Positions 765 to 43,472 of a stretch of 64,000 nucleotides of DNA are shown here, piece after piece. The notes below the pieces were generated by a model that searched no databases, was not told the origin of the DNA, and saw only the letters and a list, made by a program, of their open reading frames with translations. The position numbers were made by a program, and so were the translations under genes. Position 1 is the stretch's first letter. Each line of letters begins with the position of its first letter. Origin of the DNA: Lytechinus pictus (taxonomy: Eukaryota); assembly GCF_037042905.1 (NCBI RefSeq), contig NC_087246.1:51088001-51152000 (forward strand), written 5' to 3'.

Positions 765-1341
765 CTGAGGAGTAAAAAAATATTTAAAAAATTTCCAAAA
801 ACTGATATTTAGTATTGCATTAAAGCTTCATAACATATTGGCCTATTAACCCCCTACTGTCTTGGGCGATTCCATACGTGTCGTACAGGAAATTTTGAAA
901 TTTTCTAGTTTCCTAGCTGAATGCTTGAGCAATAAAATATTATTTTTTGTCACTGATAAAGCTATAGCGGGTAGTCATGTGAAAAACTCAGAAATGTCCT
1001 GTATGACACGCAACATTTTAACCTCTAATTCACCAATGGACGACATATTCTTGCTGGTTGTCAGTTTTTGCATGCCTACCCAGTAGCACTTTAATATTAC
1101 CACAAAACAAATTGAAGTTCTTCGTTCTTTGGACAGCAGGTTGAAAAATATTGTGAAAATGGCTGATTTTTCTTGCATGGAATCACCCTCTTTATTAAAG
1201 ACCAAATTTGATTTTAGACACAGAAGTGATTACCTAACAGTATGAAGTAACTACCTGATGTTATAATATGTGGAATGTAAAATATCTTTCAAATCAAGTG
1301 ACCAATGTGTTATTTTTTTAATTCGACCTATCATTCTGAAC

Positions 1342-1820
1342 AGTAGTAGTAGTAGTAATAGTTAGAAGTAGTAGTAATAGTAGAAGTAATAGTAGTAGTA
1401 CTAGTAGTAGTACTAGTAGTAGTACTAGTAGTAGTACTAGTAGTAGTACTAGTAGTAGTACTAGTAGTAGTACTAGTAGTAGTACTAGTAGTAGTACTAG
1501 TAGTAGTACTAGTAGTAGTACTAGTAGTAGTACTAGTAGTAGTACTAGTAGTAGTAGTTAGTAGAAGCAGTAGTAGTAGAAGTAGTAGTACTAGCAGTCG
1601 GAGTAGTAGTAGTAGTACTAGCAGTCGGAGTAGTAGTAGTAGTACTAGCAGTCGGAGTAGTAGTAGTAGTACTAGCAGTCGGAGTAGTAGTAGTAGTACT
1701 AGCAGTCGGAGTAGTAGTAGTAGTACTAGCAGTCGGAGTAGTAGTAGTAGTACTAGCAGTCGGAGTAGTAGTAGTAGCAGTAGCAGTAGCAGTAGCAGTA
1801 GCAGTAGCAGTAGCAGTAGC

Positions 1821-1853
<33 letters not shown>
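1342..1853. repeat. Compound (AGT)n microsatellite with 12-bp and 27-bp higher-order units
   Basis: (AGTAGTAGTACT)n, then (CTAGCAGTCGGAGTAGTAGTAGTAGTA)n, then (AGCAGT)n, then (AGT)n. Confidence 0.97.
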
Positions 1854-1926
1854 TGAATTTATCATCAATATGACAATGACAATTATTATCAAAGAAAAAT
1901 TACAATGACAGTATAACTAGACATAC

Positions 1927-8615: not shown

Positions 8616-8940
8616 AAAGAATGACCATGGTAAAAAGCTGGATGGCCACTTGTGGAAGGTCATCGCAGTTGGCCAAGAACGGGCTGACGAGGTACTGAGA
8701 CGCGATGAGGATGATGATGGCGTATTCGCCGGGGTAGCTGATGAACAGACTCATCCACATCCGGATGAAGGCCACGAACGGGCCCCATGCTTGAAGGATG
8801 TAGGCGAAGTCGCCCCCGGACAACGGGATGGTGGTCGAGAGCTCCACGAAGCACAGGGCTCCGAGGCTGGAGAAGAGACCGCATATGATCCAGGCGAGGA
8901 AAGAGTAGCCGATGACACCGTCTGTGTATACTAGAATGAC
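8616..8940 (-). CDS. SLC7 transporter coding exon 2
   Basis: CAG|GTC acceptor and T|GTACGT donor. Encodes WIICGLFSSLGALCFVELSTTIPLSGGDFAYI...SPFLANCDDLP, including the conserved Cys that bridges to the SLC3 heavy chain. Confidence 0.95.
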
Positions 8941-10315: not shown

Positions 10316-12390
10316 CATTACATGTACATCTATGTCATAACTGCAGAACTACAGCATTTTCCCAGTAATTGCAGTAATGACAAGAATAAATGTAGCACAA
10401 TGCTTGTAATTTTTAATCAATCAGCATACATGTGTGAGGAGGCTAGTGAAAATAGAAGTGAAAATGGATATTTCGACGATTCGATGGAGGCACATTTCCC
10501 ATTCCATTTGCATAATTTGGTGGAAATGCATTGCATTTTGGTAATAAACTATGATACAAAAATAAACTTGTGGCGATGAGGAATGAGGACAGGCAAATGC
10601 AGAAGCACAAATTCAGAAGATCAATCTATTGATTTTAAGTTTACAATACTTTACATATTAAAATGAAGCAGTCGTAAGTGCCGAAAAAATTTCTTCTGAA
10701 TAAAAGTTTCACAGGGTCGAATGTGATCCTAACCGGACCATGTTTTGAAATAATGTATCATACATGTCATAGCAGAGTAATGTCACGTGATGTACCCCAC
10801 ATGACCCCAAGAAATCCTATAACATGCTCATCCGCGATCTTCTGTTCATCATTGAGTTTGACGTTTGCTTTCATATCGGGGTCCCGTTTCATAAAGTCTT
10901 ATCAGACATTACAAATGCACAATTTCTAGAACAAACGTACTAACAGCCAACCAGAGTGAAGGATTTCAGTAGCTTTTAATTGCTATTGCAAATTGCTTGT
11001 TATAAAAAGTTTCATGAAACGGGCCCCATATCTATCATGAACGAACTTTCTTTTGTACAGGGCAGGAAAAGGGTTCGTCTGATAAGCGAGGTCATCATCA
11101 GAGCAGACGATCATCTTTGCCAGCGAATGTTTGGACTAGAATATCGATTGTATTCTGGCGCGCACAACAATTATGATCCCCCGATATGGGTACGTCTGCT
11201 TTGTTCTTACTTCAATAGATGGGCACCCTAGTTGGAGTTACGTTTCTGGCTACTTTCCAAAATATTTCAGATGTACAATGAACTTTTTTAAAAGTCTTTC
11301 ACACAAGCTACGTCTTTAATCACCATGAAAACTGCCTTTTTTTAAAATCATATTCTACTTTTTTTTCGATTTTATATTATCAAACATTCCATTAATCTAC
11401 ACATACATTGAGTAACTGAAAAGTGATGAGTTGTGACAATTTAGGGTGGTAAAGGTGGATGGCAATGTTCCAACAACAAAATAATCACTACATTTTGAAC
11501 ATTTTCACGTTGTCTAGCATTGCAATTTCTTTAGTGATTCGTTTTTCGAATATGATTGGACTTAATACAAGTTTCTGCCATGTAATTTTCCGTTTTTCTC
11601 TATAGGATATTGTTCAAAGATATGTGACTATTATGATACTTGGTGACCTTAGATGTAGTGAACCTAACCTATCAAGATCTAGGACAATGTAAGGAATACC
11701 AGGCCAAGCCCCCACCATACCCACTTCGGCCTATAAACAAAGATATGATATCGTTGTCTCAAATGTTCAGAAGCTTTATAAATAATGCATGTTTGACCCT
11801 CTTCCTAATCACCCCCTCCCCTTCTCCTTCCAACCGTCTCATGCCACACATATAATCTGAATTTATTCCACATTTGTCTAAACTTTAAAGTTTCGCTTGA
11901 TTATTTTTTTCGTTTGATTTTGGTAACGTTTGATAATATTGTAACGGTATGAAGAATTCGTAATTGCAAGTGATGCCTTGACCGAGAACTACTACACAGT
12001 TATCGACCCCATGCCAAGCCCCCTTCATCCCCACATAGCATGAATATATTAACACATTATTTTTGTAGTAGTTGGCCCGTGTTCAAGTGCGTCACTGTAA
12101 CGACACGAGGTGATATTACATACACATGGGATTCCCATCTAATGCACTTGTATCACATGTAAGTAGTTATCTCATCGAATTCGTTTATAACGAGTACGAC
12201 ATAGACCTATAACATGAGTTGGCCCAGAAGATCGACATCCATTTGTTTAAAAGGTAGACAAGAATCACACAAAAAGACCGATATATTATAAGTATGATCT
12301 TGAGCATCAAAATATATTTCATCTTTCTTTTGGGGAATTTTTTATTATTTATTTTTCATTAGCCTCACTTAGCTTTTCGATTTTAAAATT

Positions 12391-12456
12391 CATATGTTTG
12401 TCAGTTTGCCTCCGACGAAGATTCTGCTAGGATCGAAAGCTTAGGCCCCTTTTGAC
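12391..12456 (+). ncRNA. Minimal type I hammerhead-ribozyme-like motif in a 66-bp insertion (Penelope-like remnant)
   Basis: GCCT-CCGACGA-A-GATTCT-GCT-AGGATC-GAAA-GC-TT-AGGC, flanked by the 16-bp direct repeat TTTCGATTTTAAAATT. Confidence 0.6.
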
Positions 12457-14359
12457 TTTCGATTTTAAAATTGACAGAAACTTAATATTCTAAATATGTA
12501 CACTTATACGAAGTTACACCCACAAATGCCCATCTGGGTATACTGATAATAATAGTCAATGTTACGTCCAAGGTGGTACAACATTTTTAAAAATTATTTT
12601 CCATACAAGTACGATATTTTTTTAACCAGAATGTCATTCGTTTCTATGCGAACGTCAAAAGTCATGTAAACAATCGACATGAAAAGTTCGTTGAACCAAT
12701 CGGTCTCCCGATTGCTCGTATTGCAATTAAAGACGGCAAAGAGAATACCAAAAAAATACTATATACCGGTAAGCCATTTGTATGAATGATTTGGTTTTAA
12801 TCGTAATACATAATATGTGTACCCACTGCCTTCGCAAAAAATAACCCTTTTGAAGGTTGTTCTTCATAATTTACATTCAGGGTCAATTATTGAGGTCATT
12901 TGTCGTGGTAACGTCCCCGTGGAACAATAGCATGGATGAGCTCAGTGTGGGGAAATTGAATTAGATGATCGGGAGGCTTCACGCAACAAATGTTTCCAAC
13001 ATCTCAGCAAAAAAAAAACCAGGCACTCAAGCAAACAAAACATGATCCATATGCCTCAGACAGACATAACTAACAAAACCGGTCTATACCAGAATTTTCC
13101 GGATAAGATTGCCCTACCGCTTTTTTATCTTGTTAGTTTCTACAAATGAACTTGAATTCCACTTTGCGATCACGTTTATAGTTATATATTATCTCGAGTT
13201 TCATGAAATATTTATCACATGAACATCGTCTGGGTGCAGGATTTAGTAGATGGTCTCATGCGTTGTCTTACGTAGGAAACAAATAATAAATGTTTTGCAA
13301 ACGTTATCTTTACTCAAATATCTTCCATATTCCATGACCTCGGTTTAAAAAAATTGCTTTCTTGTTGAAAGATTGTAGACCAGACGAATTTCAAACCTTA
13401 AAGCATTATTGTCTTTGTAAACTGCATCTATTTCATTTATATTCTCGATTTTTTTTATTCAACGAGTTTAGACTCATCGGAAAACTACACTTCCGAACAA
13501 AACTTAGTGAAACTGTCAAAACCGTTTCTGTATAGCAAGAAAACATTACCAGAGGATAAACAGACGTTACTAAAATAAAGCGCTGTTTTGACTTCCGTAT
13601 ATGCTTAAACCTTTAGTAAACCTTCTTTTACAATCGGAGAACAATTAATTTCCGTGGGTGTTAATGCAATTAATTCTGTGAAAACTACACTAGTGAAAAC
13701 AATCGCCAATCGCTATCGGGGAATTCTACAGATATTTCCTTAAAGACATTTTTGCTGCAGACTCGTCTCAAAAAGCCGCAATCTCTCATTCACATGGTTT
13801 CAGGAATAGACACATGTTTAAATTCTCAAGGCCACTTATCGGAACACGTGCAATTAGCCCATTAATGGTTTCTAAACAAGATTATGATAAGCTTATTATT
13901 TTGCTCAACCCGTGATCTGATTTAACACTATAATATAAAATATTTCAAGCGACTTTGGTTTTTTTTTCTTTCCCGATATAAAGCTGAAATAGAGCAGTTG
14001 GAATACCGGGATATTTTAATGACAGAATTATGTATTTAAAAAAAAAGTTTACTCTCAGAATTAGGAAGGAATTGCTGACTGAGCGTTTCGGGAACTGCAT
14101 CTTCCCGTCACTTAACCTCCCCTTTCCACACCGTATCCGACGTCGTATTTCTCATTCATTTTAAATTCCTAGGCCGATAATAATTGATTATTTTCACTTT
14201 TACTTTTATAAATGCGATCGATGGACTTCTACTAGAAATGTACGTTGGACATTTAGGCCTATATTTCAATGATTCAGTTTTGGATTTTTTCAATTACTTA
14301 AAGTTGTTCGGCACCTTCATCTATCAATGTATAATTGTCCTAACTTTTCTTGTACCTAC

Positions 14360-14575
14360 CTGCGGCGATACGAAAATTCCCGAGCCTATGATGATGCCGA
14401 CCACCATGGCTATACAACCAAAGATTCCGACTTTCCTCTTGAGGACAACCTCTGGTTCTCCTCCTTCTCGAATGTCCGTCATGGTCTGATTCGGTGTTTC
14501 CGAAGAGGCTGCAGGAGGTACATCTCCACCGGGACCCGTATCCGCTTGGTCTGCGGAGGTGCTGTCTGGAGCCAT
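14360..14575 (-). CDS. SLC7 (LAT/y+LAT/b0,+AT/xCT family) amino-acid transporter light chain, coding exon 1
   Basis: MAPD...LKRKVGIFGCIAMVVGIIIGSGIFVSPQ contains the SLC7 TM1 GSGIF motif. There is an in-frame TGA upstream (14612-14614) and a CAG|GTAGGT donor at 14360/14359. A pyrimidine-rich acceptor at 14734-14736 means the exon starts at 14733 with 5'UTR. Confidence 0.93.
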
Positions 14576-40267: not shown

Positions 40268-40693
40268 ATATATTGCTATACACACGCGTGGCCAAATTAT
40301 TTCCAAACACCCCTAAACAAGTTTTTCTCTGTGTGCAAAATAACCCCCTAAACAAGTGTTTCGCAGGCTTTATTGACACATTTTGGCCCCTAAACAAGTT
40401 GTCGCCAGAATATGACCCCGGGAAAAAAGCTTAGGGAAAAAAAACATACCCTAAACACGTTTGGCTAGTCTTAAAAAAAGCTTTGGAAAAAAACATACCC
40501 TAAATACGTTTGATCCTGCGATTGACCATTGACCAGTCTTTCAAAACTACCCCCTTTTTTTTTAAATTGGAGTTTTTGATACCCTTAATGAGTAAACGCG
40601 CGGCCCTCGTCCAAAACTGAAAAAACACCCCTTTCAACACGTTTTTGTTGGTCACGCGCAATATATATTTGACTGCCCCCCCCCCCCCCCCGG
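40268..40693. mobile_element. MITE with CCCTAAACA internal repeats and a CCCCCGGG end; inverted partial copy at 45817-45915
   Basis: CCAAATTATTTCCAAACACCCCTAAACAAG recurs as a reverse complement at ~45857-45890. Confidence 0.65.
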
Positions 40694-42879: not shown

Positions 42880-43472
42880 TGACCTCCCAGAAAAAAAAAG
42901 TTGTTTGGAATCAACAATTTGAAAATCAAACAAGAATGAAAAAAAGAGGAAAATTTCATCAAAATTCAAATGAGAGAGTTATTTTAAAGTTTCACTTATT
43001 TTTCACAAAACATTTCCACGAAATGATAATAAATAATAGTTGAGATTTATATAGTGCATACTTATTTTTCACAAATAATGATAAATAATAATTAAGAATT
43101 GAATAGGGCTTTACAACAACACTGATATGCAAATGAGAGACTCTATATCACTACATCTATTTCTTTTGTTTTTTATTGTTTAAATTGAACAATGTTTCAA
43201 TTTTTCAGATTTGACAGTTAGAACCATCTTGATTTACCCATGAAATTTTGTAACAATGTATTCCACATTTTCAGGGAGGATTAACACTTTGTTTCACATG
43301 GCAATGAGGAGGATATTAAAATAACTTGTTTTTCATCTATGTATAAAGTGATTTTTTTTAACTTCTTATTTTCTTATTTTACTCTTGATTGTGATGAAAT
43401 TTTCAATGTTATGTTTGCTTAATTTTTCTTTTTATTCAAATCAACTTTTTGTTGGGTGGACTTGCACTTCAA
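42880..43472. mobile_element. Decayed Kolobok-type MITE family C
   Basis: Internal similarity to 23836-24461, ending TTGGGTGGACTTGCACTT. Confidence 0.7.

What the first reader, a model, noticed from the sequence alone, without database searches (positions are those of the whole stretch)
12375..12472. Tiny insertion that is essentially just a hammerhead ribozyme
Seen: a 16-bp direct repeat TTTCGATTTTAAAATT (12375-12390, 12457-12472) brackets 66 bp that fold as a type I hammerhead. Stem I is GCCU/AGGC, extendable by GUCAG/UUGAC. The core is CCGACGA+A, stem II is GAUUCU/AGGAUC, then GAAA, then a loop-less palindromic stem III (AGCU) and a CUU cleavage triplet. Known: Penelope-like retroelements carry minimal hammerheads with very short palindromic stem III, thought to cleave as dimers. 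Inference: this is a severely truncated PLE or a retrozyme-like mobile RNA with a non-canonical U4C core, inserted antisense in an SLC7 intron.
Basis: partly seen in the sequence, partly recalled or inferred. Interest (0 to 1): 0.75.

Follow-up and report, generated by a model that had tools for sequence, protein, structure and literature searches.

The report
Stub of Penelope retrotransposon with hammerhead
The 66-bp insert is an ordinary, very short retrocopy of the ribozyme-bearing tail of a high-copy Penelope-like jumping gene in a sea-urchin genome. Its one unusual trait is a changed base in the ribozyme core, which the whole family shares.

Summary
An exact 16-bp direct repeat (12375-12390, 12457-12472) brackets 66 bp that have every part of a minimal type I hammerhead.

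The insert is the last ~68 nt of a Penelope-like element (PLE) that encodes reverse transcriptase and a GIY-YIG endonuclease. The motif occurs about 1,400-1,700 times in this genome. Copies are 5'-truncated along a continuum, and roughly half appear shorter than 65 nt. They carry 9-14 bp target-site duplications, the PLE "tail" and inverted pairs.

Related PLEs (65-87% protein identity) carry the same motif with U at core position 4. Their 3-8 core pair, helices I and II and the stem III palindrome co-vary, so the motif is a real PLE minimal hammerhead. Only this family has C at position 4 (1,398 copies against 35 with T).

RNA-seq shows no pile-up of read ends at the predicted cut, and Rfam does not detect even the relatives with the standard core. 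The copy lies antisense in an intron of an SLC7-type permease gene. It has no partner copy and is most likely inert cargo.

This kind of element is already described (Cervera and De la Peña 2014). The scan has already reported a sibling solo copy elsewhere in this genome (s1-320036). The empty allele was not tested.

The parts
12375..12390 (+). Left copy of the target-site duplication (TTTCGATTTTAAAATT)
   Evidence: Exact 16-bp repeat. Other copies of the family have 9-14 bp TSDs in AT-rich targets.
12391..12456 (+). PLE-derived insert: the 3'-terminal 66 nt of the element. It is 66-70 nt if the junction microhomologies TT (12389-12390) and TTTC (12457-12460) are counted as element sequence.
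   Evidence: 92-100% identical to 43 scored copies out of 560 first-look candidates. It aligns to positions 1233-1311 of a 1,300-nt 3' reference taken from L031.
12401..12405 (+). Distal helix I, 5' strand (GUCAG). It pairs with 12452-12456 (UUGAC).
   Evidence: It is 4 bp in the family. This helix is kept in only part of the relatives (75% of cells paired).
12408..12411 (+). Helix I, 5' strand (GCCU). It pairs with 12443-12446 (AGGC).
   Evidence: 100% paired in 7 sequences, with one compensatory C-G to U-A change.
12412..12418 (+). Core box CCGACGA (positions C3 to A9). Position 4 (12413) is C instead of the standard U.
   Evidence: All five related PLE lineages sampled have U at position 4. 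In this genome the motif has C at position 4 in 1,398 copies and T in 35.
12419..12419 (+). Unpaired A between A9 and position 10.1.
   Evidence: Invariant in all relatives. It is a listed hallmark of PLE minimal hammerheads (PMC4209133).
12420..12434 (+). Helix II hairpin: GAUUCU, loop GCU, AGGAUC (6 bp, starting with G10.1-C11.1).
   Evidence: 100% paired. Pair 37-45 of alignment A1 occurs as C-G, U-G and U-A.
12435..12442 (+). GAAA box, palindromic AGCU (helix III without a loop, able to pair only with a second copy), and the CUU triplet. The predicted cut is between 12442 and 12443.
   Evidence: Positions 15.2/16.2 are G/C in four sequences and C/G in three, so the palindrome is kept. No read-end pile-up was seen at the equivalent site of L030.
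12457..12472 (+). Right copy of the target-site duplication. Its first 4 nt (TTTC) also match the element's own end.
14360..14575 (-). Upstream coding exon of the host amino-acid permease (SLC7-type) gene. Limits are approximate. It contains the IGSGIF motif at 14372-14389.
   Evidence: (translation) and the ORF at 14324-14575 (minus strand). Splice sites were not verified.
8620..8907 (-). Next coding exon of the same gene. Limits are approximate.
   Evidence: AA_permease_2 (PF13520), E = 4.3e-11, profile positions 31-128. Further exons lie at 1920-2066 and 82-339 (profile positions 216-261).

Best explanation
The insert is a dead-on-arrival, extremely 5'-truncated retrocopy of a Penelope-like element (PLE) of a sea urchin. 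The closest named proteins are from Lytechinus.

Inferred mechanism:
1. The element's RT/GIY-YIG protein nicked an AT-rich site in an intron of an SLC7-type gene.
2. It primed cDNA synthesis on the element RNA at its usual internal start site. That site lies about 20 nt downstream of the hammerhead (...GACUUUCUA), and 4 nt of microhomology (TTTC) may have helped.
3. It copied only about 68 nt before synthesis stopped or jumped to the target.
4. A staggered second-strand cut left a 12-16 bp duplication.

The family's minimal type I hammerhead sits at the very 3' end of the unit, so such a stub contains little else. The motif is a true homologue of PLE minimal hammerheads, but the whole family carries C instead of U at core position 4.

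This copy has no helix III and no second copy to pair with. It has the weakened core and lies antisense to the host gene. It is therefore most likely catalytically silent cargo.

What is shown: the family membership, the anatomy, the truncation continuum, the homology and covariation of the motif, and the host context. What is inferred: the order of the integration steps and the lack of cleavage.
For: - Copy number: 43 scored copies at 92-100% identity out of 560 candidates. The motif with C at position 4 occurs 1,398 times with 0 control hits. A 20-mer from the 3' half of the hammerhead occurs 1,695 times.
[quoted passage not shown] Full-length relatives are about 850-930 aa with DUF8422, RVT_1, HTH_animal and GIY-YIG.
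- Truncation: sampled copies are 68 to more than 1,300 nt long. Exact 20-mer counts fall gradually with distance from the 3' end: 1,695, 1,162, 881, 780 and 571.
- PLE signatures: 9-14 bp TSDs at other copies. About one third of sampled copies carry a ~60-bp tail, and RNA-seq loose ends show the two classes of 3' end. Inverted pairs occur. L030 holds a pLTR-tail-5'UTR-ORF junction.
- Hammerhead homology: relatives at 87, 78, 70, 67 and 65% protein identity carry the same motif with cores CUGAAGA, AUGAUUA, UUGAUAA, CUGAUGA and UUGAGAA.
- Covariation: helices I and II, the 3-8 pair and the stem III palindrome are 100% paired. Four pairs show changes on both sides. Slid controls give 20-47% pairing.
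- Host context: permease exons lie on the minus strand on both sides.
- Literature: PMC4209133, PMC8557442 and PMC11167929 describe exactly these features of PLEs.
Against: - Rfam hammerhead models do not detect the motif. They also miss the relatives with the standard core, so this says little.
- The fold is no more stable than shuffled sequence.
- Covariation rests on only six independent lineages.
- The empty allele was not examined, so the insertion is inferred from the TSD and the family structure alone.
- Exact 20-mer counts mix truncation with mutation. The 36-55 nt word contains two CpGs, and the 76-95 nt word is polymorphic.
Confidence: 0.9

Rival explanations
1. The stub is not a random 5' truncation. 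It is a run-off cDNA of a short RNA that starts at the element's own promoter in the pLTR, just upstream of the hammerhead, and is primed at the first RT start site. Solo-hammerhead copies would then form a discrete size class.
For: TATA-like boxes lie 15-40 nt upstream of the hammerhead in the family. Earlier scan notes place the PLE transcription start between a TATA box and the hammerhead (s1-327688) and speak of a sharply defined copy class (s1-320036). Many very short copies exist.
Against: The 20-mer counts fall gradually, with no step at 66-68 nt: 1,162 at 36-55 nt, 881 at 46-65 nt and 780 at 56-75 nt. Sampled 5' ends are scattered: 68, 70, 71, 78, 83, 86, 87, 89, 98 nt and so on. The window copy includes one of the TATA-like boxes.
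Confidence: 0.07
2. It is a retrozyme-like non-autonomous mobile RNA: a small hammerhead-bearing unit that spreads through circular RNA.
For: It is small and carries a hammerhead. A 2026 preprint links animal retrozymes to PLE pLTRs (10.64898/2026.07.22.740005).
Against: There is no tandem repeat at the site or in the window. The sequence is collinear with the 3' UTR of the autonomous element at every longer copy. No clear back-joined reads were seen at the cut site.
Confidence: 0.02
3. The resemblance to a hammerhead is a chance match, and the conserved block has another role or none.
For: There is no Rfam hit. The folding z-score is -0.07. The core departs from consensus at an otherwise invariant position. 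No read-end pile-up marks the predicted cut.
Against: Five related lineages keep U4, G5, A6, A9, GAAA, the extra nucleotide after A9, G10.1-C11.1 and the palindrome. The 3-8 pair co-varies as C-G, U-A and A-U.
Confidence: 0.02
4. The copy has been taken over by the host as a regulatory ribozyme of the SLC7-type gene.
For: It lies inside an intron.
Against: The hammerhead strand is antisense to the gene. The copy is one of well over a thousand near-identical ones, differs from the family at 1-2 of 66 positions, and has no partner for helix III.
Confidence: 0.01

Closest known systems
Minimal hammerhead ribozymes of metazoan Penelope-like elements (Cervera and De la Peña 2014, PMC4209133)
   Same: It is a type I motif in the PLE terminal repeat with a short helix I (4 bp) and a long helix II (6 bp). 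It has an unpaired nucleotide between A9 and 10.1, a G10.1-C11.1 pair, and no helix III loop but palindromic 15.2/16.2. The motifs are mostly found as solitary copies ascribed to truncated PLEs. U3-A8 covariation is seen in relatives, as in Schistosoma Cercyon.
   Different: Core position 4 is C in the whole family, where the published descriptors require U. A3-U8 also occurs in one relative (L060). Activity was not tested here.
Poseidon PLE of Anolis carolinensis (PAc), studied in vitro (PMC11167929)
   Same: It combines RT and GIY-YIG, prefers AT-rich targets and starts reverse transcription internally at two adjacent sites, which gives tailed and tail-less 3' ends. Here RNA-seq reads diverge at the tail-less end about 2.7 times as often as at the tailed end. 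In PAc, hammerhead catalysis is not needed for insertion in vitro, and no RNA-seq reads end at the cut site. The second point matches.
   Different: In PAc the ORF start overlaps the hammerhead. Here about 530 nt of tail and 5' UTR separate them (L030). The linker before GIY-YIG has a C-x5-C-x2-C motif, which PMC8557442 gives as a trait of Neptune/Nematis-type PLEs. The clade was not tested by phylogeny.
Natural U4C hammerhead of a viroid (Ambrós and Flores 1998, as cited in PMC3088659)
   Same: It has the same core substitution. It is reported to lower activity considerably in vitro while still sufficing in vivo.
   Different: That hammerhead is a viroid ribozyme stabilised by tertiary contacts. 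This one is a minimal, dimer-dependent retrotransposon motif.
Animal non-LTR retrozymes
   Same: They carry type I hammerheads related to PLE pLTRs.
   Different: Retrozymes are tandem units that give circular RNAs. This is a single stub collinear with an autonomous PLE.

Membership tests
Penelope-like element (EN+ PLE) | A single ORF with reverse transcriptase followed by a C-terminal GIY-YIG endonuclease | tested here: met
   The L031 ORF hits RVT_1 and GIY-YIG, both just under the Pfam cut-offs on a 434-aa fragment. L058 has a 680-aa open frame with YIDD and the GIY-YIG motifs. Relatives carry RVT_1 and GIY-YIG.
Penelope-like element (EN+ PLE) | Frequent 5' truncation, partial tandems (pLTR), adjacent inverted copies and a 30-40 bp or longer tail at one end | tested here: met
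   Inverted pairs are in L014, L026 and L061/L062.
Penelope-like element (EN+ PLE) | The window copy is flanked by a target-site duplication and ends at the family's 3' boundary | tested here: met
   The repeat is 12-16 bp. The 3' end is at ...GACTTTC, as in other tail-less copies.
PLE minimal hammerhead (PMC4209133) | Conserved core boxes CUGANGA and GAAA | tested here: not met
   GAAA is present, and C3, G5, A6, G8 and A9 are present. Position 4 is C, not U, in this copy and in 1,398 genomic copies. The relatives meet this feature or co-vary at 3-8.
PLE minimal hammerhead (PMC4209133) | An extra nucleotide between A9 and 10.1, a G10.1-C11.1 pair, a long helix II and a short helix I | tested here: met
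PLE minimal hammerhead (PMC4209133) | Palindromic 15.2/16.2 (helix III formed only between two copies) and an NUH cleavage triplet | tested here: met
   AGCU here and ACGU in three relatives. The triplet is CUU.
PLE minimal hammerhead (PMC4209133) | Helices supported by covariation among related elements | tested here: met
   94% of cells are paired, against 20-47% in slid controls. Four pairs show changes on both sides. None of 500 shuffles reached the observed covariation score. Only six lineages were compared.
PLE minimal hammerhead (PMC4209133) | Self-cleavage at the predicted site | tested here: inconclusive
   Three RNA-seq runs show no pile-up of read ends at the site at about 500x depth. 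The detection threshold is a fifth of the depth. No biochemical test is possible with these tools.
Rfam Hammerhead_1 (RF00163) | A score at or above the gathering threshold | tested here: not met
   There is no hit in the window even at E <= 10. The genome's best hit scores 25.7 bits against a threshold of 34. The relatives with the standard core also give no hit, so the model does not cover hammerheads without helix III.
Animal retrozyme | Tandem repeats of a small non-coding unit with one hammerhead per unit | tested here: not met
   There is a single copy in the window. It is collinear with the PLE 3' UTR.

The most novel reading that the evidence does not exclude
A PLE family spread to well over a thousand copies after its hammerhead acquired C at core position 4, while every structural feature of the motif stayed intact. 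Two readings follow. In the first, ribozyme catalysis is dispensable for PLE retrotransposition in vivo, and the fold is kept for another job, such as marking the adjacent start site for reverse transcription or binding the element's protein. In the second, the U4C minimal hammerhead is a naturally tolerated, protein-assisted active variant. Either would be a natural-history counterpart to the in vitro result for the Anolis element.
Probability: 0.35. Interest if true: 0.5.

Novelty: new member of a known kind. Interest (0 to 1): 0.3.

Why it matters
The tiny insertion itself is routine. It shows how PLE retrocopying can leave stubs that hold little more than a ribozyme motif. This explains the many solitary minimal hammerheads reported in animal genomes.

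The family-level detail has modest value. It is a young, very successful PLE lineage in which an otherwise invariant core base is changed in nearly all copies. That bears on the open question of whether PLE hammerheads must cleave for the element to move.

Tried and rejected
- Rfam at gathering threshold and at E <= 10 gave nothing. A genome search with RF00163 found nothing over the cut-off. The control on relatives with the standard core was also blank, so Rfam is uninformative here.
- The minimum-free-energy z-score was not significant. A two-copy co-fold gave a swapped helix II and not the active dimer, so it was uninformative.
- I compared conservation of the 66-mer with its upstream flank among copies. 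I discarded the result because the first sample had been selected on the 66-mer. In the unbiased sample (L038-L048) the two are similar.
- I tried to reach the 5' end of a full-length master copy.
- The empty-allele test was not done. Four same-species contig runs hold 1.00, 0.93, 0.87 and 0.87 of the sampled words, which does not settle presence or absence of the insert.
- The supplement of PMC4209133 and the paper of Ambrós and Flores 1998 are not held in the library.
- The 35 copies with T at position 4 could not be classed as older copies or CpG-decay products without their flanks.
Full report
**Observation.** The window has an exact 16-bp direct repeat at 12375-12390 and 12457-12472, with 66 bp between. 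Only nine groups of 16-mers or longer repeat within 150 bp in the whole window, and most of those are simple repeats.

- helix I, GCCU with AGGC
- core box CCGACGA, then an unpaired A
- a 6-bp helix II with loop GCU
- GAAA, then the palindrome AGCU
- a CUU triplet before the 3' strand of helix I

The predicted cut lies between 12442 and 12443. The minimum-energy fold does form helices I and II, but it is no more stable than shuffled sequence (z = -0.07). Rfam reports nothing, even at E <= 10.

**What it belongs to.** The 66-mer is repeated across the genome. There were 560 first-look candidates, and 43 were scored at 92-100% identity. In the other copies the sequence upstream of the 66-mer is conserved for variable distances. 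Downstream, the copies end at ...GACT(T/C)TCT(A). Pairwise comparison shows copies of 154, 194, 1,169 and 2,200-3,000 bp that all share the same 3' end.

[quoted passage not shown] The closest database proteins are 850-930 aa with DUF8422, RVT_1, HTH_animal and GIY-YIG. The closest named ones are from Lytechinus variegatus, at 92-95% identity over fragments. The host is therefore a sea urchin. An earlier scan note calls it the painted sea urchin, which I did not verify. The linker before GIY-YIG has a C-x5-C-x2-C motif, which PMC8557442 lists for Neptune/Nematis-type PLEs. I did not test the clade.

**PLE signatures.**
- Sampled copies run from 68 nt (the window copy, the shortest in a sample that required the full 66-mer) through 70, 71, 78, 83, 86, 87, 89 and 98 nt up to more than 1,300 nt.
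- Many copies show clear 9-14 bp duplications of AT-rich targets.
- About a third of sampled copies continue past the usual 3' end into a shared ~60-bp tail.
- Head-to-head inverted pairs occur.
- L030 holds a truncated upstream copy followed by the tail, a 5' UTR and the start of the ORF. This is a pLTR-ORF junction, confirmed by alignment to the tandemly assembled relative L059.

These are the features described for PLEs in PMC8557442 and PMC11167929.

The element's end reads GACTTTCT(A). The TTTC that begins the right-hand repeat in the window may therefore be element sequence or priming microhomology. The duplication is then 12-16 bp, in line with the other copies.

**How common such stubs are.** The table gives exact 20-mer counts at increasing distance from the 3' end.

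| Distance from the 3' end | Copies |
|---|---|
| 16-35 nt | 1,695 |
| 36-55 nt | 1,162 |
| 46-65 nt | 881 |
| 56-75 nt | 780 |
| 76-95 nt (a polymorphic word) | 571 |

The decline is gradual. About half of the copies appear shorter than 65 nt, and roughly a hundred fall in the size bin of the window copy. These counts mix truncation with mutation, so they are approximate. They give no sign of a sharp 66-68 nt class.

**Is the motif a hammerhead?** Contigs encoding related PLE proteins were fetched and scanned with a minimal-hammerhead descriptor. Five lineages carry the same motif at the same place, upstream of the ORF and/or downstream of it.

| Lineage | Protein identity | Core box |
|---|---|---|
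| L059 | 87% | CUGAAGA |
| L060 | 78% | AUGAUUA |
| L065 | 70% | UUGAUAA |
| L061-L063 | 67% | CUGAUGA |
| L066/L067 | 65% | UUGAGAA |

All five keep U4, G5, A6, A9, GAAA, the extra A after A9 and G10.1-C11.1. The 3-8 pair co-varies as C-G, U-A and A-U. The stem III palindrome switches between AGCU and ACGU.

On the alignment, helices I and II, the 3-8 pair and the palindrome are 100% paired. Four pairs show changes on both sides. Overall pairing is 94%, against 20-47% when partners are slid. These are the hallmarks listed by Cervera and De la Peña (PMC4209133). Rfam also misses the relatives with the standard core, so its silence says nothing about membership.

**The core change.** Only the window's family has C at position 4. 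In this genome the motif occurs 1,398 times with C at that position and 35 times with T, 24 of which read CUGACGA. C4-G5 is a CpG, so most of the T forms may be decay products. I could not check their flanks. According to PMC3088659, a natural U4C viroid hammerhead has much lower activity in vitro yet works in vivo.

**RNA evidence.** Three rRNA-depleted RNA-seq runs of the same species were laid on L030:1100-2300.
- Depth rises toward the 3' end and peaks over the hammerhead at about 500 reads, in both orientations.
- Depth falls to near zero after the tail.
- 81% of reads run on into unrelated flanks.

The reads therefore come mostly from dispersed stubs inside host transcripts, not from the element's own mRNA. 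No position qualified as a place where many molecules begin or end, including the predicted cut at 1551/1552. Loose ends mark two classes of 3' boundary, tail-less and tailed, at about 2.7 to 1 in read counts. This fits the two adjacent RT start sites found for the Anolis element (PMC11167929). That study likewise saw no reads ending at the hammerhead cut, and it found catalysis unnecessary for insertion in vitro.

**Host context.** On the minus strand there is an exon with the IGSGIF motif at about 14360-14575. A second exon at about 8620-8907 matches AA_permease_2 positions 31-128 (E = 4.3e-11), and more exons lie at 1920-2066 and 82-339. The insert therefore lies in an intron of an SLC7-type permease gene, and the hammerhead strand is antisense to it.

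**Verdict.** The object is a routine, very short retrocopy of a PLE tail. Such solitary minimal hammerheads were already ascribed to truncated PLEs in 2014, and the scan has reported a sibling copy in this genome (s1-320036).

The feature worth keeping is at family level. An otherwise invariant core base is changed in nearly all of the more than 1,400 copies, while the fold is intact. This suggests, but does not show, that cleavage is not needed for this element to spread.

Noticed in passing
window 42994-43075: A 16-bp exact direct repeat (ACTTATTTTTCACAAA) brackets a 50-bp AT-rich stretch. It may be another tiny insertion with a target-site duplication.
   Followed up: no
window 40438-40504: An 18-bp exact direct repeat (AAAAAAACATACCCTAAA) has a 31-bp spacer, and the sequence after each copy is similar. 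It looks like a local duplication.
   Followed up: no
window 1321-1905: A long minisatellite with a 27-bp period, rich in AGT/CAG-type triplets, gives long spurious poly-Leu/Val open frames on both strands. It lies inside the permease gene between exons.
   Followed up: no
L060:707-746: A related PLE (78% protein identity) has A3-U8 in place of the C3-G8 core pair. Its helix I is changed in a compensated way (UGCUU/AAGCA). U3-A8 occurs in L065 and L066/L067.
   Followed up: partly
G000, 35 places listed: Thirty-five copies have T at core position 4: 24 read CUGACGA, the rest TTGACGA or ATGACGA, and one CUGAUGA. C4-G5 is a CpG, so deamination may by chance restore the standard core. Their flanks could not be fetched.
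   Followed up: no
L030:1336-1532: RNA-seq joints that skip 195 nt (ends TT..AT) appear in all three runs, 8 reads in all. This suggests a deletion-bearing subfamily of the 3' UTR and not splicing. L039 has a separate 18-nt deletion inside the hammerhead.
   Followed up: no
L061 and L062: Marine-metagenome contigs of a related PLE show an inverted 5'-truncated copy, with its own hammerhead, directly next to the upstream pLTR. This is the textbook PLE arrangement.
   Followed up: partly
L030:1558: 13-18% of RNA reads carry an extra T in the C4T4 run just after helix I. This is a length polymorphism among family copies.
   Followed up: no
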